From NCBI GenBank assembly GCA_976226885.1, contig OZ320321.1, forward strand, positions 2,046,001 to 2,110,000: a DNA stretch of 64,000 nt, in the 5' to 3' direction. Position 1 is the first letter of the stretch; every line of letters starts with the position of its first letter. The notes under the pieces are model-generated. The model worked only from the letters and a program-made list of their open reading frames with translations. It had not been told where the DNA came from and ran no database searches. Of this stretch, positions 17,128 through 27,260 are shown one piece after another. A program made the position numbers and the translations under genes. The DNA is from Iphione sp. A-MEVVRFRX5. Taxonomy: Eukaryota.

Positions 17128-17929
17128 CATAAAGCCACCAGAGGGACCAATAATGACATTTCAAAAAAATCATTATGCTTACTTAGAAGTTCCAATCGAA
17201 CCATGAATAATCTCGCTATTTTCGGGGTCTAGCTCAGGTCTGAAATAAAATTATTTTGTACAATTCCTCCTGCTAACCATACCCAGTCCTGGTGTCCTGG
17301 TGCCTCTACACTTGACTGCATTCTAGATAAGTCGATCCTAGCTAACACTGAACTACCCAGGATGATTCATACAACAAATACCACGTCTGACTTCATTCCC
17401 TCTTGATAACTAACGAAACACTTCCTAGTGTCGAAGGCGAAGAGATACGGGAAATTTACCTGTACATCCTATTCCATGTACATATGTACACAGTTTGCAA
17501 AGCTACTCACCCCCCTCACCCCACACCATGGCCCGGAATGCTTTTACCGGGAAGTGGTTTACACTCAGAGAGTAGTGCGACCCTTACGTCTCAAATGTCT
17601 ACCCTGAGTGCTATGTAATTGTTAATGCAATGACAACGACGCTGTTAACCCTATCCACTAGTACTGCCTATGTGTGTCTCCTGGCTAATTACTATAAATT
17701 ACAAAAACTCTAGCTTAACGTTCATGAGGAGGGACCGTGGTGAGTATTTGATCATTTTAGATCTTGTATTTTCTTTTCAAATGCGCAGCATGTGTAGATG
17801 TGTGTAGTACATGTACGTCTGTCATCTAAACATGCTTGACCGTTCTGTAGTGGGTTTTGTTTTTTCCTCCCATGAGTTCGGGTATGTTTCCTTCTGTCTG
17901 TCTGTGAATAACCTTGTTGTCCGTCCCCT

Positions 17930-18041
17930 CCTTCCAACGATCCAGGACTGCCTCTGCTGCTGCTGCTGCTGTTACCTCACTACAGCTGCAGCGGCTGCTG
18001 CGGCTGCTGCCACTGTCAACACCACCACCACCGCTGCCGCC

Positions 18042-18076
<35 letters not shown>

Positions 18077-18270
18077 AGCGCTCAGTACTAGCGCTACTGT
18101 CTACTGCCGTCGTCGCCGTCGTGGAAGCTGGATCGGTTAGACAACCGGACCATAGACGGCCGGCTGCTGGCCAAACACCCAGTGACGGCCTGTCACCCGA
18201 TGACAAGCCGAGGCCACTCGAGACGGGTCGGACCGCCTAGCGGCGAATAGGGCTCCGCCATACCCAACAA
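17930..18270. promoter_or_regulatory. CpG island with (GCT)n/(GCC)n/(ACC)n triplet runs at the start of the ANKS1-like intron 1
   Basis: Very GC/CpG-rich; (GCT)~9 at about 18046-18072 and (CTG)~6 at about 17954-17971. Confidence 0.6.
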
Positions 18271-18810: not shown

Positions 18811-19733
18811 CACTTTGACTTAAATAGGAATGTAATGTAATGTGTTTAGTACACTTGTCAGAGTAAAGTGAGGTATTTAAAGTGTAAAGTACATCGTGTA
18901 GAAAACAATAATTTGATGATCCTCGAAGTCTTGATTTTCTTCATGTCTTTCTCAGCATCTGGTAATCTATTCCAACCACCAATTCCTTTACAATAGAAAC
19001 TATTTCTTATAAATTTGGTCTTAGGCTCAATTTGATGAATCTATTTCGATTTCGCCTGCCGGGTCTGTCCCCTACTTTCTGGTCATTACACACCTGGTAA
19101 CTGCAACCTATGAATCAAAAGAACAGATCTGGATATTGATAACTGGTGAATGGACCAATCGCCAGTGGCTGAAGAAACATTGTCCCGATTTTAAGCAATC
19201 TGATTGGTTGATTCCCACTAAGACGTCACAAATAGTAAAAATGACGTAGACTACGCGTTTCTTCAACCTTTCGTGATTGGTCCATTGAAGGCAAAGATAA
19301 CCTATTCTTGAGTTTCTCTGCAGAGACCTCTCTTTGTGAATCTCCATGTAGAATCACACGTTTCACAGCATTATTGAAATCTAAGGATCCCAAATGTCAG
19401 ACCTTGATGACAAACTAGAGGATGATGTCAGAGGCAACATGCAAAAGAAAAGAACACACAGACTTCCAAGTACTTTTAATTTGTAATCTCAAAAGCTTTA
19501 TACTTTTACCAATATCAGACCACTACTGGCACCATAGGTAAACCTTAATAAATTGCCAGTATTGGGCTATTATTCTTTTTTTTTTTTTTTGAAATGGCAC
19601 CAGCCAGTTTATTACAAGAAGATATTACAATTGATCAATCCGTGGTGCTTTTTGAAGTTTTTTTAGATAGAAAACAAAATAACAACAATAACATGAATAC
19701 TTAATACTAACAAAGAAAAAGGTGGATTTGTAT

Positions 19734-22700
19734 TTACATTTGTTCAAAAATATAATCCCATACATTAAACTTAGACGACATACCTCTGTATTTCCAAACA
19801 AGTCTCTCAGTTAATAAAATCCGTTTAAATTCGAGTAACCAGTCGTACAAATCAAAGTGACCGTTATGAAACCTTTTTTGACGGAATAAATAATATTTAC
19901 CCCATAATAATAAAAAGTTAATTTGATGCTTATTCTTATATCCTGATTGGACTCCAAAGAGAAATTCCCTAATTTTAAGGTCATATAGTGATTCATTTGT
20001 TACTCTGAACCACCAATCAAGGATATGTTCCCAGAAAGATTGTGCTACAGGACAATCCACGAAAAAGTGAAATACATCATCAATACCATCACAAAAAGTA
20101 CATTTAGGTGTAGACAAAATGTGACGTTTACATAAAAAGGCATTAGTGGCAATAATATTATGATTCACCTTGTATTGAAAAGTATGCCATTTGGTATTTA
20201 CAGTACAACGGAAGGGTGTCAAGTAAATATTAGACCAAGTATAGTTTTCATCAGACAAATGGGACATATAAGTAGACCAATAATTACAACCAGCAGATTT
20301 AGACAAATAGGATCGAACAAAGATCCAATAAAGCTCCTTAGCAGATAGTCTTAGAATATTAATTACAGAGTTATTTATCTGTATTAGTAAAGCATTTTTT
20401 TGAAAAACAGCAAATGATGACTTTAAAGTCTGAATATATTCCCAGGGGGGGATACATTGAAGCAGGTTGAATTCAGCTTGTGTACAATTTAGGTGGTGCC
20501 GAGAATTAAATTGAGTTAAAGTAAGGAAAGATCCATGTGCAAATATATCACCAACTGCTATAACTCCAGCTGGTTTACATATACTTTCCAAAGATTTGCA
20601 ATGTAAATTGTTACTTGCATCATTATTCCACAACGGAGCATTAATCATCAAGTCAGGATGAGCTACATCAGCAAAGTATAATTTAGACCAGGCTCGAAGA
20701 ACTTCTTTACCAAATGGCCAGGTACAATTTTTATGTAATTTTTTTGATTTAGCAAAAAAGAAATAGTAAAGGTCATGTGTTGTAAATAAACCTTCCAAAA
20801 GATAGGCAATATCAGGAAATACTCGGTTAACCCATCGGTTAACCTGAAATACTCGGTTAGCTTGGAACCTGGAGAAGAAATCCGCCAACTTTAACCCACC
20901 ATCAGAGATTTCCTGAGTCAGTACATTTTTTCTAATTTTGGCAGGTTTTTGATTCCAGATGAATTTGGTGATAATAGTGTTGATTTCTGAGAAGACCTTA
21001 GTAGGTACCGCTGTCACAGACATTATGTATTGAAGCCTAGGTAGTAATAACGAGTTAACAATGGTAATATTCCCCTTAAGCGATAAAGACTTAAATTGCC
21101 AACGTTGTATCAATGTACGAATTGCTTTAAAATGGGGTAAGTAATTAAGGGTATAATGTAGATCTTCATTATAACTTTCTAAAAACCATACACCAAGTAT
21201 ACGGATTGTAGAGACAAGAGGGATATTGAATGTAGGATGAGGGGTAAATATAGAAGAACCCAAAGGTAACAACTGAGATTTTTCAGGGTTGACTTTAAGA
21301 CCAGACAGTTTATAAAATTCATCAAGAATAACAGCAATTTCGTCTAGATCAGACTGATTTGCTACAAACACCGTTGTATCGTCTGCATATTGAACTAGCT
21401 TATATGACATGTTACCAACACAAATCCCATTAAAAGTAGCAGATGTTCTAATCATATAAGATAATACTTCAACGACTAATATAAACAATAATGGTGAAAT
21501 CGGACATCCTTGATGGACTCCTCGTTGCAATGGAAAATAATTAGAGGTGTAACCAGCATTGAATATACAACATTCTGAATTCATATATAAAGTTTTTATC
21601 CAATGAATCATCTGAGAAGAGAAATTAAATTTATGTAGGACCGCACTCAAAAAATTCCAAGAAACACTATCGAAGGCCTTTTGAAAATCTAAACTTAACA
21701 CAGCACCCGGCAGTTTTAAAGTATTAATATAATGTGATATATCATTAATAAGTTGTAAGTTATCATGGATTGTACGACCTGGGAGAAATCCTGTTTGGAA
21801 GGGTGAAATGTAATCACCAAGAATTTTTTTCAAACGGGTTGCTAAAGTTTTCGCTACAATTTTATAGTCGGTGTTAAGAAGTGCAATGGGTCGCCAATTT
21901 TTTATATATAATTTATCTTTTAAAGGTTTAGGGAGAAGGGTAATGAGAGCTCTGCGTTGTTCCATACTCATCTGACCACCTTTATAGGCAGCATTAAAAT
22001 TTTCTAAGAGGAAAGGAGCCAAAATTGACCAAAAATGTAGGTAGAATTCTCTAGTAAGGCCGTCACTGCCTGGGGATTTGTTAGGTGCCATGTCTTTTAG
22101 TGTTTGGTACAATTCATCTACTGTAAAGGGAGCATCCATAAATTCGTTATCAACATCATTGATTTTTGGTAACTGCATATGTTGTATTTCGTTAAGTAAT
22201 TTTTGTTCCCCTTGAGTAGAAAAACCTTCTCCTGAGTATAGAGTACGGAAGAAATTATGTTGATATCTTAATAATTCTTTAGGGTTCGTAATCACATCCC
22301 CCTGATCATTCTTTAGAATTGAAATCGATTTTTGCTTTGCTTTTTCTTTTTCCAAACGTAAGAAATAGCCCGAGGGTTTTTCCCCAAAGGAAATCCATTT
22401 TGCTTTTGAACGTAACATAGCACCTCTGGCCTTTGCATTTTCAATCTCTCTCAAGTCTTTGGTACATGATTTAATTTCCATTTCCTCCGAGCTAACATCG
22501 ATGGAGGAGGTAGCAGAATCTATAACAGATTGTAAATGTAACAATCTAGTCAATAGCTCATTCTCAGACTCTTTAGCTTGTTTAGCCTTAATTTTACCAT
22601 ATGAAATAGTATACGCACGTATTTTGTACTTAACATAATCCCATTGCATAGATAGACTACACTCAGATGCCTCCTGAAACCAAAGAGGAAGGAGTGCTGT

Positions 22701-23510
22701 TATCTCAGCACAGTAGGAGGAATCCTGTAACAACATATTATTCATTTTCCAGTACCCAGGGCCAGGTTTATGGGACGGAGTATAAAACTCACATATAACT
22801 GGATTATGGTCAGACTGTGAATTAAAACCAATGGAAGAGTTAACCACTTTAAGCTCTAGTTCCTTAGAGACAAAAATGTAGTCTATACGAGTAGCTGCAG
22901 ATGGTCCATGCCACGAATACCGACGAACTTGAGGGTGTTGTGTTCGCCAGATATCTGTAAGGTTGAAAACGTCCAGTAGATTTTGTAGAGCCTTTGCAGA
23001 TTGAGAAGGCGTCCGTGAGGTAGAAAGTGAAGATTTCTTGTCAAGAAGCGGATTAAGAGTAATATTAAAGTCACCAAGAATACACCAGGGGTATTCATCA
23101 TCTATACCTGAGATAAAGTCTGTAATTTGTTCAATCAAAGATATCTGGTCCTTTGCTTCATTAGAAGTGAAGCAATAAATGTTGATAATGTGAAAAGTCA
23201 TATCTGAAATCGTTACCCTTGCGTAGATATAGCGACCCTGCGAGTCATTTTGGGTGGTATGGATCTTATAGGTCAATTGAGAGGAAAATAAAAGCGCAAC
23301 ACCTGCTGATCTGGTGGATCCATGAGAACACACCCAATCCCCTGACCATTGTGAAGACCAGTAGGGTTGTGAATCTGGAGCACTATGAGTCTCCTGTACG
23401 GCAATTACATCATATTTACTAAGCTTAAAGTTCTCTAAAATTGCCTTGCGCTTTATCTTACCACCTAACCCTCTAACATTTAAAGTAGCAATCTTAAGTG
23501 TAGAAAACAT
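19734..23510 (-). CDS. LINE ORF2 protein, 1258 aa: APE endonuclease + reverse transcriptase + C-terminal CCHC zinc finger
   Basis: EN motifs ATLNVRGL, VQETH, GDFN, IDY, SDH. RT motifs WRPIALLNTDYK, LDFQKAFD, QGCPISP, YADD. C-terminal CTFC...HFFVDC. Confidence 0.97.
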   Translation of the reverse strand: MFSTLKIATLNVRGLGGKIKRKAILENFKLSKYDVIAVQETHSAPDSQPYWSSQWSGDWVCSHGSTRSAGVALLFSSQLTYKIHTTQNDSQGRYIYARVTISDMTFHIINIYCFTSNEAKDQISLIEQITDFISGIDDEYPWCILGDFNITLNPLLDKKSSLSTSRTPSQSAKALQNLLDVFNLTDIWRTQHPQVRRYSWHGPSAATRIDYIFVSKELELKVVNSSIGFNSQSDHNPVICEFYTPSHKPGPGYWKMNNMLLQDSSYCAEITALLPLWFQEASECSLSMQWDYVKYKIRAYTISYGKIKAKQAKESENELLTRLLHLQSVIDSATSSIDVSSEEMEIKSCTKDLREIENAKARGAMLRSKAKWISFGEKPSGYFLRLEKEKAKQKSISILKNDQGDVITNPKELLRYQHNFFRTLYSGEGFSTQGEQKLLNEIQHMQLPKINDVDNEFMDAPFTVDELYQTLKDMAPNKSPGSDGLTREFYLHFWSILAPFLLENFNAAYKGGQMSMEQRRALITLLPKPLKDKLYIKNWRPIALLNTDYKIVAKTLATRLKKILGDYISPFQTGFLPGRTIHDNLQLINDISHYINTLKLPGAVLSLDFQKAFDSVSWNFLSAVLHKFNFSSQMIHWIKTLYMNSECCIFNAGYTSNYFPLQRGVHQGCPISPLLFILVVEVLSYMIRTSATFNGICVGNMSYKLVQYADDTTVFVANQSDLDEIAVILDEFYKLSGLKVNPEKSQLLPLGSSIFTPHPTFNIPLVSTIRILGVWFLESYNEDLHYTLNYLPHFKAIRTLIQRWQFKSLSLKGNITIVNSLLLPRLQYIMSVTAVPTKVFSEINTIITKFIWNQKPAKIRKNVLTQEISDGGLKLADFFSRFQANRVFQVNRWVNRVFPDIAYLLEGLFTTHDLYYFFFAKSKKLHKNCTWPFGKEVLRAWSKLYFADVAHPDLMINAPLWNNDASNNLHCKSLESICKPAGVIAVGDIFAHGSFLTLTQFNSRHHLNCTQAEFNLLQCIPPWEYIQTLKSSFAVFQKNALLIQINNSVINILRLSAKELYWIFVRSYLSKSAGCNYWSTYMSHLSDENYTWSNIYLTPFRCTVNTKWHTFQYKVNHNIIATNAFLCKRHILSTPKCTFCDGIDDVFHFFVDCPVAQSFWEHILDWWFRVTNESLYDLKIREFLFGVQSGYKNKHQINFLLLWGKYYLFRQKRFHNGHFDLYDWLLEFKRILLTERLVWKYRGMSSKFNVWDYIFEQM

Positions 23511-23607
23511 AACAAAAGAAACGAGAAAAGTCGTAGAGTAGGGGGTGGACAGCTAGAGAAGGGGAGAGAAGCCAAGAAGAGATAAAAAGAGGGAGGCTTG
23601 ACGACGT

Positions 23608-25062
23608 TCATGCTGAAGCTGCGCCTTGGGGGGGAGCTGCCGATGCCCTGCGAATCTGGCTGCGAACATCCATAAGCATGGCACCTAGACGATTGGCGCC
23701 ACGCCACGTTGCGATGTCGGAAGCATACGGGGAAGAGATGGTTTGACCAGTACCCCAAACCTGGTCACGAGCTGCCCATCCGATCCTTCGTTCTGCCGTC
23801 TCAAGAAGAACGCGACGTGGGTAGGGGTGTGCCTTGTAGAAGACTGGAAGCGCCTGCTGTAGGATGATGATTTCTCTCTGCACCGATTGATCCGAATGCG
23901 TCTTCCTCAGTGCATGCAACAGAGGGGTAAGACGACGAGGATCTGGGTCGCATCGTGCTCGCCGTGCTGTCAAAGCATCTCCAACCTGCTTTGCAATTTG
24001 AACAACGAGGTAATTGAGGAGCGATGGAAATTCTTCAGCCTGAAACACGGTGGGAGCGTAGAATTCCAACGCAAGAGGATGATGCAACCCGAAATAAGCA
24101 TAAGCTTCATTGGACACCTTCGAACACAGGACCTCCGGAGCCACAGCTGCAGGTAGCATATCAAGGGATTTAACCGTGTAGACCTTGCCGTCCAGGTGTA
24201 ATTCTTCATCCTTCAAACGAACCGAGGTGAAAGCCCCAGACTGCTTGGCCGCTTTAACTACTCGATATAAAATAGCACGGTCCTCCCGAATTTTATCCGG
24301 CAAGTCCTCTCGCACCCATATTTGAGCCGCTTGGTAATTACGAAGATGTGTACGTGCGTTCCAAACTCTATTGCGGTCATAAAGCGTTTGAAAGCGTACA
24401 ATCACTGATCTACGAGGTGTACCAGCTGGGCCTAAGCGATGAAGTGTATCAATTTGAACATTCGTAAGACCCAATTGATACTGAAATAAGTCTATCATAG
24501 TGGAATAAAGTAGATCATTCGACTCTGACTGTCTCTCGAAAATTCCGTCGAAACATAGGTTGAGTCTTCTTGTATAACGTTCATGTTTCAAAGTATGTTG
24601 CTCCAGATTGGAGAGCTTACGAGAATCAGCCTCAAAAAGCCTGGTGAGCGAAGTGATTTGATCTCCCATTTTCGAAATCAGCTGTTCATGATGAGCAAGG
24701 GTGTTATCAATTCTCTGAGAAGTTTTAGTTGAGACTCCGATATCTTTTTGGACGTGTTCTAGCCTACCTTCTACCATAGTTACTCGTGTACGAACAGAAT
24801 CACTATCCTTATTGAGTGTAGCAATATGAGTATTCAATTTCTGAAGCTCTTTAAGAACAACCTGTAGCTCACCAGATGATCCCTCAGCATCAGGCAATGT
24901 CGGAACGTTGGGAGTCGGAGTGTCTTCAACAGCAAGAACTTTGACGGGAATTTCAGGCGAGCTGTTTGTAGAGTGTGCTCGATCCGCTTGTTTCCTTTTA
25001 GTAGAAACCTTGTCAACATCCATGTCTGTTGGTTCGTCACATTTCTCCACCGTTGAGGCCAT
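23608..25062 (-). CDS. LINE ORF1 protein, 484 aa (530 aa from the upstream in-frame ATG at 25200): coiled coil + RRM + CTD + C-terminal NADAR/YbiA-like domain
   Basis: Heptad-like region, then L1-ORF1 motifs RRLNLCFDGI, HRLG, VIVRF, VREDLP. The C-terminal ~155 aa contain LLET..RIGWAARDQVWGTG...WRGANRLGAMLMDVR, matching the NADAR signature. Confidence 0.9.
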   Translation of the reverse strand: MASTVEKCDEPTDMDVDKVSTKRKQADRAHSTNSSPEIPVKVLAVEDTPTPNVPTLPDAEGSSGELQVVLKELQKLNTHIATLNKDSDSVRTRVTMVEGRLEHVQKDIGVSTKTSQRIDNTLAHHEQLISKMGDQITSLTRLFEADSRKLSNLEQHTLKHERYTRRLNLCFDGIFERQSESNDLLYSTMIDLFQYQLGLTNVQIDTLHRLGPAGTPRRSVIVRFQTLYDRNRVWNARTHLRNYQAAQIWVREDLPDKIREDRAILYRVVKAAKQSGAFTSVRLKDEELHLDGKVYTVKSLDMLPAAVAPEVLCSKVSNEAYAYFGLHHPLALEFYAPTVFQAEEFPSLLNYLVVQIAKQVGDALTARRARCDPDPRRLTPLLHALRKTHSDQSVQREIIILQQALPVFYKAHPYPRRVLLETAERRIGWAARDQVWGTGQTISSPYASDIATWRGANRLGAMLMDVRSQIRRASAAPPQGAASA

Positions 25063-25575
25063 ATTGTGGATGTAGCGTCGAATAACAACACGGAACGGGG
25101 GAGAGAAATGCCAGTTGGGAGGAGGATAGCAGACGACTTTTGCGGGAAGTAAATACCGCGTGACGTCACGACATAATGTGGTGCGCATGCTCACATACAT
25201 TATCGTCCGCGGAAATAAATAAGCAAGAAAAAGCAGAAAGATACGAAGAGCGTGATGAAATACAGTAAAATAATAACTCCTCCATGTTCTAGGAACCTTC
25301 AGACATTATATGGCACATTTTGAGCCTAAAATAATAAGAGAAAATAAAGAAAAATAAGCTTCTCTCACGACCGTCCGTTCAGAGCGTCATTGCTTGCTGT
25401 TGCCAACCGGAAGTCCCGGGCTATTATTCCAGCCTTGTGCTGGGATACAGTGAGCTTACTGACCTCTAGTGGGGGGTATGGTAAACAAGTGTGTACCAAC
25501 ACTGTTGGTATGCAAAAGAAAATAGTTCCACATACTAAAAATATGTGATTTATTTAAATCTCAAGGCTAGAATAA

Positions 25576-25726
25576 AGACAAAACCAGTACAGTGAGCTAT
25601 GGATGATGCCAAATACTCGTTCAGGTAGCATTATCATACCAAACTCGGCCTTCCGGCCTTGTATGGTATTCATGCTACCTGAACTTGTATTTGGCTTCAT
25701 CCAAGCACACTGTACCAGTTTTGTCT
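25576..25726. repeat. Imperfect foldback palindrome (arms about 72-75 bp, loop ttcc), likely part of a MITE-like element
   Basis: Left arm agacaaaacc...ctcggcc pairs with the reverse complement of ggccttg...ttttgtct at roughly four in five positions. Confidence 0.8.
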
Positions 25727-26169
25727 AAGTACCAGTGTGACTGCACTGTTCCTTCAGTATATATTCAAGTGCAGTGTAGGTCTGCCATTGGCACTGCACT
25801 TGAATATATAGGTACTGATTGTTTGACGAGGCTAAGCCCTTTCCTCTCTGAAAGCTACCGAGTCAGTGTTCCTGCCAGCTTTTTGCTAGAGACCATATAG
25901 CCTTTTTTGTTGTGGTTGTAACTATGGTGACAGCTGCTTCCTGCCTTATTCAGGTATCACTGCAGTGTCCCTTTTCATGAATAAATAAATAAAGGCTTAA
26001 TGTTTTGTTACCTATGACACGGTTTAGACGGTTGTCTCATCAGGCTTTTGGTGTATGATAGTAATGTGTGGAGTCTATATGGGGAGCATAATGGTTTTGC
26101 TTATAGCATTATTTGGTTAGAAAAAAACAGATAGTGTTTTTTTTTATATTATATATATTTTGAATATAT

Positions 26170-26479: not shown

Positions 26480-27260
26480 ATAATCATAACATCAACAGAT
26501 TAGGCCCACTTACGGTTGCATGTATAGTGATACATCATCAGCATAAATCATAACCTGCCATTTTGATATTACCAGGCAAATCATTTATCCTAACAGCAAA
26601 TATGAGGGGCCCCAGGACACTCCGCTGGGGAACCCTCCCATAACTTCAGTCTGTTCTGAGTAAGCTCCATTGCACGAGACATTGAAATCGATTCACAAGA
26701 TAGGATTTTATAAACATAATTTACCCAACCCCATTTTAGTTTATTTATGAACAAGGACCTGATGATTCACAGCATCCAAAATCTTAGAGAAGTCTACATT
26801 AGAACTGTGCCGAAGTATTTACCATTACTAATCGTATGATAGGCTGGAATTGATAGAGAAGCTGTTGCGGTGTCTGTCCCCCGCCCTTTGCAAAAGCCAT
26901 GCTGGTATGGTGACATCAAATGCTGCCTCTGAAGGAGAGATATTAACTGATCATAAACTAATCTTTCTAGCAACTTGCCAACTACCAGGAGTATTGATAC
27001 CGGCCGAAAATTCTTATCATAGAAATTCCCTTTCTTAAGTATTGGTGAGATACGGGCTGTCTTCCAGGGGTGAAGGAAGTTGTTGCTGAAAATACAAATA
27101 TTGAACAGATCCCTCAACTCGTCTCTTTAATAAGAGCCCATCTTTCAGAACTCTCATGGGTAACTCTTGTATACCCGTGGGTTTATGCATTGATAAACCG
27201 TTGACTACCTGCCTTTCACTTCTTTCACAGTGACATACTGAAATTTGCCTTCCTTCACTG
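26480..27260 (-). mobile_element. Decayed CR1/L2-type LINE reverse transcriptase fragment
   Basis: WKTARISPILKKG..KNFRPVSIL, QHGFCKGRGT, VPQRSVLGPLIF and LYADD, with stops and frameshifts. Confidence 0.85.

What the first reader, a model, noticed from the sequence alone, without database searches (positions are those of the whole stretch)
23608..25062. Intact L1/Tx1 LINE whose ORF1p carries a C-terminal NADAR (YbiA-like) domain
Seen: after a normal L1-type ORF1 core (coiled coil, RRM, CTD ending near LDGKVYTV), the ORF continues in frame for about 155 aa (nt ~24108-23650): YAYFGLHHPLALEFYAP...LLETAERRIGWAARDQVWGTG...WRGANRLGAMLMDVR. This matches the NADAR pattern F..PLSNFY.P...LL.T....LVEA..D..WG.G...W.G.N.LG..LM.VR. 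Established: NADAR proteins include the riboflavin-pathway N-glycosidase YbiA and antitoxins that remove ADP-ribose from guanine in DNA (DarT1 system). LINE ORF1s are known to acquire accessory domains such as SGNH esterase and PHD. I do not recall NADAR being characterised in an L1/Tx1 ORF1p, but cannot check the literature. Inference: the element may carry a counter-defence against host nucleic-acid ADP-ribosylation, or a captured nucleotide-binding module displayed on the ORF1p trimer in the RNP.
Basis: partly seen in the sequence, partly recalled or inferred. Interest (0 to 1): 0.92.

Follow-up and report, generated by a model that had tools for sequence, protein, structure and literature searches.

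The report
LINE ORF1 protein with dead NADAR domain
This is a complete, recently inserted L1-type jumping gene whose RNA-binding ORF1 protein ends in a NADAR (ADP-ribose hydrolase family) domain; the fusion is real and belongs to a very large LINE family already mentioned once in the literature, but in this copy the domain has lost its catalytic residues.

Summary
A full-length L1-superfamily LINE lies at 19576-25417 on the minus strand, with a 12-bp target-site duplication, an A15 tail and intact ORF1 and ORF2. ORF1p has a coiled coil, an RRM and a CTD, followed by a C-terminal NADAR domain (Pfam 54 bits against a cutoff of 35; structural Z 18.5 to P. nicotianae NADAR).

The fusion is not a one-off. 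An exhaustive search found over 1000 clusters at 50% identity, and the top 150 all span the ORF1 core plus NADAR. The nearest ORF2 relatives also carry an ORF1-NADAR upstream.

It is not unreported. A 2025 Genome Biology paper (PMC12477816) notes NADAR domains in ORF1 of oyster Tx1 LINEs in Repbase, without characterising them. This scan's first readers flagged many ORF1-NADAR LINEs elsewhere in this genome (unchecked notes).

What is new is that the family keeps the NADAR active site almost invariant, while this copy has replaced all three catalytic positions (E43, K50, E125 equivalents become L395, I402, W475) and four other near-invariant residues. Its NADAR branch is 3.5 times the family median, but its ORF1 core is typical.

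An enzymatic counter-defence role is therefore unlikely for this copy, though plausible for the family. No other copies or reads of this lineage could be obtained.

The parts
25418..25429 (-). 5' copy of the target-site duplication, GAATAATAGCCC on the element strand
   Evidence: Exact 12-bp repeat found only at 25418-25429 and 19564-19575 in the window
25063..25417 (-). 5' UTR (355 nt). It holds an upstream in-frame ATG at 25200 that extends the mechanical ORF to 530 aa
   Evidence: Sequence between the TSD and M47. Homolog alignments and the structure model begin after M47
23608..25062 (-). ORF1 (484 aa from M47, plus stop)
24868..25062 (-). ORF1p disordered N-terminal region (aa 47-111 in 530-aa numbering)
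   Evidence: pLDDT below 50 in the model
24571..24867 (-). ORF1p long helix / coiled coil (aa 112-210)
   Evidence: Single helix at model residues 66-164. Its C-terminal part aligns to the coiled coil of the human L1 ORF1p trimer 2yko
24127..24570 (-). ORF1p RRM plus CTD core (aa 211-358)
   Evidence: Matches 2yko (Z 12.1) and 2w7a RRM (Z 11.8). All 11 near-invariant family positions are kept
23638..24126 (-). NADAR-fold domain (aa 359-521; Pfam match 366-517 = nt 23650-24105), with degenerate active site
   Evidence: Pfam 54.1 bits; family profile E=3.6e-32; 8bau Z 18.5; 7 of 17 near-invariant positions replaced
24016..24018 (-). Codon L395, at the position of catalytic Glu E43 of P. nicotianae NADAR (Glu in 106 of 106 homologs)
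23995..23997 (-). Codon I402, at the position of catalytic Lys K50 (Lys or Arg in 103 of 106 homologs)
23776..23778 (-). Codon W475, at the position of the YbiA-family catalytic Glu E125 (Glu in 101 of 106 homologs)
23511..23607 (-). Spacer between ORF1 and ORF2 (97 nt)
19734..23510 (-). ORF2 (1258 aa): APE endonuclease (nt 22806-23489), reverse transcriptase with YADD (nt 21189-21914), zf-RVT (nt 20031-20213)
   Evidence: Pfam Exo_endo_phos 4e-17, RVT_1 9e-44, zf-RVT 9e-7. Human L1 ORF2p 8sxt E=1.2e-108 over aa 4-894. YADD at aa 708 and no internal stop
19591..19733 (-). 3' UTR with AATAAA at 19608-19613
19576..19590 (-). Poly(A) tail, A15
19564..19575 (-). 3' copy of the target-site duplication

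Best explanation
The locus is a young, full-length L1-superfamily non-LTR retrotransposon (5,842 bp; 12-bp TSD, A15 tail, both ORFs open). Its ORF1p is a standard L1-type RNA chaperone (disordered N-terminus, trimerising coiled coil, RRM, CTD) extended by a C-terminal NADAR-fold domain. The element belongs to a very large, old family of invertebrate LINEs with this ORF1-NADAR architecture, inherited together with the ORF2. In almost all members the NADAR active site is intact. For the family, the most likely role is an N-glycosidase or de-ADP-ribosylase held on the ORF1p trimer next to the LINE RNA, cDNA or target DNA, removing base ADP-ribosylation (inference). In the lineage of this copy the domain has become a pseudoenzyme. 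All three catalytic positions and four other near-invariant residues are replaced by mostly hydrophobic residues, and the domain evolved about 3.5 times faster than the family median. Domain length, the scaffold motifs (DP, L..T, D..WG.G, W.G.N.LG..LM..R) and the reading frame are kept, and the domain has become more basic. The most likely function here is non-catalytic: a structural or nucleic-acid-contacting appendage of the ORF1p trimer, or a constrained vestige. Shown: the anatomy, the family, the loss of the active site, and the domain-specific acceleration. Inferred: the lack of activity, the retained non-catalytic role, and the family's substrate.
For: Element anatomy. NADAR identity: Pfam 54 bits against cutoff 35; family profile E=3.6e-32 with a single one-residue gap; 8bau Z 18.5 and YbiA Z 15.7. 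L1-type ORF1p: 2yko E=1e-8, Z 12.1. L1 ORF2p: E=1e-108. Family size: 3003 representatives at E<1e-3, 1045 at <1e-10, and the top 150 all span core plus NADAR in one stretch. Ten of ten tested hits carry Pfam NADAR at 78-442 bits. Linked ORF2 was seen in L001, L002, L004, L005 and L006; L007 has ORF2 with a contig-truncated upstream NADAR ORF. L005 and L006 hold the two best ORF2 relatives. Active site: residue mapping through 8bau and the mutagenesis data in PMC11543638 section 12. Homologs have E 106/106, K/R 103/106, W 106/106 and E 101/106, against L, I, S and W here. Near-invariant positions kept: 11 of 11 in the core, 10 of 17 in NADAR. At the 80% threshold it is 18 of 18 against 13 of 24, Fisher p=8e-4. 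The median homolog violates 0 and the worst violates 3. Branch lengths: core 0.62 against a median of 0.48; NADAR 1.51 against a median of 0.43 and a maximum of 1.02 for the others. Identity: core 33.3% (typical), NADAR 23.8% (lowest of 107). Charge: +7, rank 6 of 107, pI 10.0 against 8.0.
Against: No biochemical data exist, and NADARs tolerate some variation: Asp two residues upstream in DarT1-linked enzymes and His in phage enzymes replace the last-strand Glu, so relocated catalytic residues cannot be formally excluded. The high-confidence fold of this diverged domain depends on the family alignment, since a single-sequence prediction failed (pLDDT 38.7). Only one copy of this lineage could be examined, and no sequencing runs were listed. 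Purifying selection on the dead domain is therefore inferred only from the kept frame, length and scaffold motifs. Retention of the frame could partly reflect a constraint on where ORF1 stops relative to the ORF2 start. This copy could also have been mobilised in trans.
Confidence: 0.68

Rival explanations
1. The NADAR domain of this copy is still an active hydrolase that uses relocated or different catalytic residues, and serves as counter-defence against nucleic-acid ADP-ribosylation.
For: The fold and the C-terminal half of the active-site region (D479, W482-G483, G485) are kept. NADAR subfamilies are known to have moved the last-strand acidic residue, to Asp or His (PMC11125620; PMC11543638). 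[quoted passage not shown]
Against: Three essential positions are lost together, to L, I and W. The near-invariant Ser-Asn, Trp (W89 equivalent) and the Lys of the KF.QN motif (K to F454) are lost as well, and at lower family conservation (over 80%) the Gln and Asn of that motif are replaced too (A457, H458). No other of 106 homologs lacks the first Glu. Position -2 from W475, where DarT1-type enzymes have Asp, is I473.
Confidence: 0.1
2. The domain is a functionless vestige. This lineage no longer needs NADAR, and the segment is drifting neutrally and remains open by chance or only because the ORF1 stop must stay near the ORF2 start.
For: It has the longest NADAR branch in the family (1.51 against a median of 0.43) and the lowest identity. 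Active-site residues are gone. The Lys-to-Arg shift and higher GC suggest that composition is drifting.
Against: After about 1.5 substitutions per site the domain still aligns to the family profile over 171 residues with a single one-residue gap and no stop. It still keeps 10 of 17 near-invariant positions, including the last motif W499, N503, G506, L509 and R513 at the extreme C-terminus. The losses are concentrated on polar and ligand-contacting residues, while Gly, Pro, Leu and scaffold Trp residues are kept. That pattern is typical of pseudoenzymes and not of random decay.
Confidence: 0.2
3. The fusion is an assembly or annotation artefact, or a private capture of a host NADAR exon by this one copy.
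For: None found. There is a compositional step, with NADAR at 54% GC and ORF2 at 35.5%.
Against: The same single-ORF architecture occurs in at least 150, and probably over 1000, diverged clusters and next to the nearest ORF2 relatives. The same GC step is seen in three of four related elements. The element has clean TSDs.
Confidence: 0.01

Closest known systems
Tx1 LINE families of Crassostrea gigas in Repbase whose ORF1 proteins carry YbiA-family NADAR domains (noted in PMC12477816, Genome Biol 2025)
   Same: A LINE with ORF1p ending in a NADAR domain, followed by an APE-RT ORF2. Function uncharacterised.
   Different: The Repbase sequences could not be compared directly, and the Tx1-versus-L1 clade placement was not tested. 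This copy is at most 33% identical to any ORF1 and at most 36% to any ORF2 in the searched collections, and it lacks the catalytic residues that the family keeps.
Human LINE-1 ORF1p (PDB 2yko/2ykp, 2w7a, 2ldy)
   Same: Coiled coil, RRM and CTD architecture; 22% identity; Z 12.1 over 176 residues.
   Different: Human ORF1p ends after the CTD, whereas this protein continues into a domain of about 160 residues. Pfam Transposase_22 does not detect this core by sequence.
Phytophthora nicotianae NADAR (PDB 8bau) and E. coli YbiA (PDB 2b3w), YbiA family of the NADAR superfamily
   Same: Same fold (Z 18.5 and 15.7). The family profile hits both at E=3e-25 and 3e-19. The ORF1-NADAR family has the YbiA-type Glu in the last strand.
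   Different: Those are free-standing enzymes with E43, K50 and E125 intact. This copy has L, I and W at those positions, and S in place of W89.
DarT1-associated NADAR antitoxins (BC4488 family) and phage gp30.3 NADARs
   Same: Same superfamily. They are the precedent for NADAR as a counter-measure to guanine ADP-ribosylation, including carriage by a mobile element (T4-like phages, PMC11825919).
   Different: Those use Asp or His in the last strand, have an N-terminal DNA-binding extension, and are paired with a DarT toxin. None of this applies here.
Ectocarpus Gypsy LTR retrotransposons with NADAR at the N-terminus of Pol (PMC12477816)
   Same: An independent case of a retrotransposon carrying a YbiA-family NADAR domain.
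   Different: A different element class (LTR), a different host protein (Pol, N-terminal), and a brown-algal host.
LINE ORF1 proteins with accessory domains, such as the SGNH esterase in CR1/L2-type ORF1 (my own recollection of Khazina and Weichenrieder 2009, not checked here)
   Same: The principle of an enzymatic accessory domain attached to a LINE ORF1p.
   Different: A different fold and chemistry.

Membership tests
L1-superfamily non-LTR retrotransposon (L1/Tx1 group) | ORF2 with an N-terminal APE endonuclease, an RT and a C-terminal Cys-rich domain, closest to L1 ORF2p | tested here: met
   Pfam Exo_endo_phos, RVT_1 and zf-RVT. Human L1 ORF2p E=1.2e-108 against R2 at 3e-21. YADD present.
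L1-superfamily non-LTR retrotransposon (L1/Tx1 group) | ORF1p with coiled coil, RRM and CTD | tested here: met
   Model matched to 2yko at E=1e-8, Z 12.1.
L1-superfamily non-LTR retrotransposon (L1/Tx1 group) | Hallmarks of target-primed insertion: poly(A) tail and target-site duplication | tested here: met
   A15 tail, AATAAA signal and an exact 12-bp TSD.
Tx1 clade specifically (as the oyster ORF1-NADAR elements are classified in Repbase) | RT phylogeny placing the element with Tx1 reference elements and not with L1 proper | not testable with these tools
   No reference Tx1 or L1-clade RT set, and no Repbase sequences, were available.
ORF1-NADAR LINE family | A single ORF1 product spanning RRM/CTD and NADAR, upstream of an APE-RT ORF2 | tested here: met
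   The top 150 of 3003 hits align across both parts. Contexts L001, L002, L004, L005 and L006.
NADAR superfamily (Pfam PF08719) | Profile match above the curated threshold | tested here: met
   54.1 bits against a gathering score of 35.1, E=2.8e-14.
NADAR superfamily (Pfam PF08719) | YbiA-like fold | tested here: met
   8bau Z 18.5, rmsd 2.4 A over 163 residues; 2b3w Z 15.7. Caveat: the model depends on the family alignment.
Catalytically competent YbiA-family NADAR hydrolase | Catalytic Glu (E43), Lys/Arg (K50) and last-strand Glu (E125), in P. nicotianae numbering | tested here: not met
   L395, I402 and W475 at those positions. Homologs have E 106/106, K/R 103/106 and E 101/106.
Catalytically competent YbiA-family NADAR hydrolase | Hydrolytic activity on ADP-ribosylated guanine or cytosine, or on riboflavin-pathway N-glycosides | not testable with these tools
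   Requires biochemistry.
DarT1-NADAR (DarTG1) antitoxin type | Asp in the last strand two residues before the Glu position, and a neighbouring DarT1 toxin gene | tested here: not met
   I473 at that position. The neighbouring gene is a LINE ORF2.

The most novel reading that the evidence does not exclude
ORF1-NADAR LINEs are one side of an undescribed conflict between hosts and transposons over base ADP-ribosylation in invertebrates. Host CARP-1/pierisin-type guanine ADP-ribosyltransferases, which PMC12945103 reports as mainly bivalve, would mark LINE RNA, cDNA or integration intermediates. The ORF1p-borne NADAR would erase the mark in cis. The catalytically dead, more basic variant in this window would then be a derived form that binds or shields nucleic acid, or the transferase itself, without hydrolysis, in the way DarG also inhibits DarT by binding.
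Probability: 0.12. Interest if true: 0.85.

Novelty: new variant of a known kind. Interest (0 to 1): 0.5.

Why it matters
NADAR enzymes were shown only in 2023-2026 to erase ADP-ribose from guanine and cytosine in DNA and RNA, and what they do in animals is an open question (PMC11125620). This work shows that a large part of animal NADAR diversity sits on LINE ORF1 proteins, with the active site conserved across more than a hundred diverged lineages. That points to an enzymatic step in the retrotransposition cycle that nobody has studied. It also gives a natural comparison for experiments: canonical family members against this catalytically dead but otherwise intact, recently mobile element. 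If the dead-domain element is retrotransposition-competent, NADAR catalysis is dispensable at least in some hosts or lineages. The architecture itself is not new, since PMC12477816 mentions it in passing, so the value lies in the scale of the family, its active-site conservation, and this pseudoenzyme variant.

Tried and rejected
- The word-indexed homolog search with full ORF1 found nothing, probably because identities are at or below 33% and coiled-coil words dominate. The exhaustive HMMER search replaced it.
- Direct sequence search of the domain against PDB was insignificant (YbiA E=0.28). It became significant only through the family profile and by structure.
- Two attempts to find sequencing runs, with ORF1 and with the whole element, listed none. 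Read laying was therefore not used, and copy number, expression and selection among copies could not be tested.
- tblastn of ORF1 and ORF2 against the window found no second copy.
- I tested whether loss of the active site marks a subclade. The core-domain tree shows the single-site deviants scattered (9 changes, no clustering) and this copy unresolved with no close relative, so that idea was rejected.
- I tested whether the GC-rich NADAR segment marks a separate capture in this copy. Three of four relatives show the same step, so that idea was rejected.
- The single-sequence AlphaFold2 prediction of the domain gave pLDDT 38.7, which is uninformative.
- The AFDB cluster search returned ORF1-like and NADAR-only clusters with the organism column blank, so it gave no taxonomic distribution.
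- The host organism was not identified. Hints are weak: annelid labels in the ESM Atlas, and LINE ORF2 relatives filed under a lucinid-clam symbiont MAG.
- Literature searches for DUF1768 or YbiA with retrotransposon terms found only PMC12477816.
Full report
**1. Observation**

The minus strand of the window carries an ORF at 23608-25200 (530 aa) followed, after 97 nt, by an ORF at 19734-23510 (1258 aa). Pfam assigns ORF1 residues 366-517 to NADAR (PF08719) at E=2.8e-14 and 54.1 bits, above the curated cutoff of 35.1, covering almost the whole profile. ORF2 has Exo_endo_phos, RVT_1 and zf-RVT. The likely start is M47 at nt 25062, because homolog alignments and the structured part of the model lie downstream of it.

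**2. Element anatomy**

- An exact 12-bp direct repeat, GAATAATAGCCC on the element strand, occurs only at 25418-25429 and 19564-19575.
- The downstream copy follows directly after an A15 tail (19576-19590), which is preceded by AATAAA at 19608-19613.
- The element is therefore 19576-25417, 5,842 bp, with a 355-nt 5' UTR, both ORFs open, and YADD present in the RT.
- A perfect TSD and a pure A tail indicate a young insertion.
- It is the only copy in the window.
- ORF2 matches human L1 ORF2p at E=1.2e-108 over residues 4-894, far better than R2 proteins at 3e-21. This places it in the L1 superfamily. L1 proper versus Tx1 could not be resolved without reference sequences.

**3. Structure**

An AlphaFold2 model of the 484-aa protein, built with a 107-sequence family alignment, has mean pLDDT 87.6 and values above 95 in the folded parts. 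The N-terminal 65 residues are disordered. A single helix spans residues 66-164, an alpha/beta region spans 168-312, and a mainly helical domain spans 314-475.

| Target | PDB entry | Foldseek E | VIA-align |
|---|---|---|---|
| Human L1 ORF1p trimer | 2yko | 1e-8, TM 0.71 | Z 12.1, model 124-312 |
| L1 ORF1p RRM | 2w7a | 6.9e-4 | Z 11.8 |
| P. nicotianae NADAR with ADP-ribose | 8bau | 2e-7, TM 0.71 | Z 18.5, rmsd 2.4 A, 163 residues, model 308-476 |
| E. coli YbiA | 2b3w | 1.6e-5 | Z 15.7 |

One caveat applies. A prediction of the C-terminal segment without the alignment failed (pLDDT 38.7), so the fold call for this diverged domain leans on the family alignment.

**4. A large family, not a one-off**

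An exhaustive phmmer search of 1.84 billion cluster representatives found 3003 proteins at E<1e-3, 1045 at E<1e-10 and 73 at E<1e-30. All 150 listed hits align in one stretch from the ORF1 core, starting at about residues 120-200, to the end of NADAR at about residue 517. Identity is only 23-33%.

Ten of ten hits tested carry Pfam NADAR at 78-102 bits, and one of them has five tandem NADAR domains. In genomic context, an ORF1-NADAR is followed by an APE-RT ORF2 of about 1250 aa in L001, L002 and L004. The reverse test gives the same answer. The two best ORF2 relatives of this element, at 32-33% identity, each have an ORF1-NADAR upstream (L005 and L006), and the third has a contig-truncated upstream ORF that is NADAR. 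The module is therefore inherited together with this ORF2 clade.

No close relative of this particular lineage exists in the collections: at most 33% identity for ORF1 and at most 36% for ORF2. This scan's first-stage notes list many ORF1-NADAR LINEs elsewhere in the same genome. These are unchecked notes and I could not read those loci.

**5. Prior art**

PMC12477816 (Genome Biology 2025, Ectocarpus TE landscape) describes a Gypsy lineage with a YbiA-family NADAR domain in Pol. [quoted passage not shown] It says the role is unclear and speculates on RNA processing. No other paper in the library links NADAR, YbiA or DUF1768 to LINEs. The architecture is therefore curated and has been noted, but it has not been characterised.

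**6. The active site**

Mutagenesis and the ADP-ribose co-crystal define the catalytic residues as E43, K50 and E125 in P. nicotianae numbering. E125 is the glutamate that defines the YbiA family. W89, R93, D130 and W133 contact the ligand (PMC11543638; PMC11125620).

A profile of the ORF1-NADAR domains hits 8bau at E=3.4e-25 and YbiA at 3.4e-19. The printed alignment lets these residues be mapped; chain numbering is paper numbering plus 2. The family consensus SPLSNH...vEQYLA..(K/R)A...W...AKF.QN...LGEAS.D..WGIG...W.G.NLLG..LM.vR is a canonical active site.

| P. nicotianae position | 106 aligned homologs | This copy |
|---|---|---|
| E43 | Glu 106/106 | L395 |
| K50 | Lys or Arg 103/106 | I402 |
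| W89 | Trp 106/106 | S439 |
| E125 | Glu 101/106 | W475 |

This copy also has A377-L378 for the near-invariant Ser-Asn, and F454, A457 and H458 for K, Q and N of the KF.QN motif. It keeps D479, W482, G483, G485, W499, N503, G506, L509 and R513. The five relatives examined in genomic context, including those next to the nearest ORF2s, all keep the full set.

**7. The change is confined to the NADAR domain**

| Measure | ORF1 core (RRM+CTD) | NADAR domain |
|---|---|---|
| Near-invariant positions kept (at least 90% conserved) | 11 of 11 | 10 of 17 |
| Positions kept at the 80% threshold (Fisher p=8e-4) | 18 of 18 | 13 of 24 |
| Mean identity to family | 33.3%, rank 92 of 107 from the lowest | 23.8%, lowest of 107 (family mean 34.6%) |
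| End branch in the ML tree | 0.62 (median 0.48) | 1.51 (median 0.43, next longest 1.02) |

- The median homolog violates none of the near-invariant NADAR positions, and the worst violates three.
- The NADAR/core identity ratio is 0.72, against 1.12 +/- 0.11 for the others, with a minimum of 0.84.
- Single-site deviants in other lineages are scattered on the core tree, and this copy has no resolved close relative, so no "dead" subclade is visible in the databases.
- Because the insertion is young and both ORFs are intact, the substitutions must have accumulated in the active lineage and not after insertion (inference).

**8. Is the dead domain retained or decaying?**

Despite about 1.5 substitutions per site, the domain aligns to the homolog-only profile over residues 349-519 with a single one-residue gap and no stop. 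It ends at the family's usual position. It also keeps the scaffold motifs up to the extreme C-terminus. The lost residues are mainly the polar and ligand-contacting ones. That pattern is what pseudoenzymes show, and it argues for continued constraint on the fold. It is indirect evidence, because no other copies or reads of the lineage could be obtained.

The domain is more basic than 95% of the family: net charge +7 (rank 6 of 107), pI 10.0 against 8.0, Arg 10.9% against 5.0% and Lys 1.9% against 8.2%. This is compatible with a nucleic-acid-contacting role, but also with compositional drift, because the segment has 54% GC. The GC step between NADAR and ORF2 is shared by three of four relatives, so it is not evidence of a separate capture.

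**9. Mechanism**

For the family, near-invariance of the catalytic residues across over 100 lineages that are only about 35% identical implies selection for catalysis. Known NADAR chemistry is removal of ADP-ribose from guanine N2 and from cytosine in ssDNA and ssRNA, plus N-glycosidase activity on riboflavin intermediates (PMC11543638, PMC11125620, PMC12945103). ORF1p coats the LINE RNA in cis. The most economical hypothesis is therefore de-ADP-ribosylation of the LINE RNA, the cDNA or the target DNA.

Possible antagonists exist in animals. [quoted passage not shown] This link is inference only. The host taxon of this window was not established, and no transferase was examined.

For this copy, hydrolysis is unlikely. 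I commit to a non-catalytic structural or binding appendage of the ORF1p trimer (about 0.6 to 0.7). The rivals are a neutral vestige (about 0.2) and residual activity through relocated residues (about 0.1).

**10. Verdict**

The architecture is already noted in the literature and curated in Repbase. The scale of the family, the conservation of its active site, and the dead-active-site variant in an apparently mobile element are the new content. I rate it a new variant of a known kind, of moderate interest.

Noticed in passing
L003:1734-4961 (protein P0133), with the next ORF at L003:5013-5258: A 1075-aa protein with five tandem NADAR domains (Pfam 442 bits, 5 stretches), followed by another short NADAR ORF, on a 13-kb ENA contig. 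No reverse transcriptase was annotated among the called genes on the contig.
   Followed up: partly
L001:8714-8872, L002:2352-2510, L004:3069-3407, L005:2341-2466: Related ORF1-NADAR elements have a small extra ORF (41-112 aa, no Pfam hit) between ORF1 and ORF2. The window element has only a 97-nt spacer. First-stage notes on this genome also mention three-ORF relatives with a separate SGNH hydrolase ORF (unchecked).
   Followed up: no
window 23611-24123 against 19737-23510; also L001, L004, L006: There is a compositional step inside the element: the NADAR segment has 54% GC (GC3 48%) and ORF2 has 35.5% (GC3 30%). Three of four related elements show the same step, so it is a family trait of unknown cause.
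   Followed up: partly
window 25576-25726 and 25758-25810: Just upstream of the LINE's 5' TSD there are nested inverted repeats: 32-nt arms at 91% complementarity, flanked by 23-nt arms, and a perfect 19-nt palindrome arm pair. They may be a MITE or hairpin element that the LINE landed next to.
   Followed up: partly
window 26794-27117 (-): A short ORF with a weak RVT_1 match (E=8e-5, below the Pfam cutoff). It is probably a fragment of a different non-LTR element, and tblastn with this ORF2 does not detect it.
   Followed up: partly
window 17811-18240: A GC-rich low-complexity stretch that reads as poly-Ala, poly-Ser or poly-Leu in several frames on both strands. It is probably a GCN-type microsatellite.
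   Followed up: no
proteins P0196 and P0214: LINE ORF2 relatives (30-33% identity) are deposited at NCBI as proteins of a 'Candidatus Thiodiazotropha endolucinida' MAG, a bacterial symbiont. An APE-RT LINE protein there is most likely animal-host contamination of the MAG.
   Followed up: no
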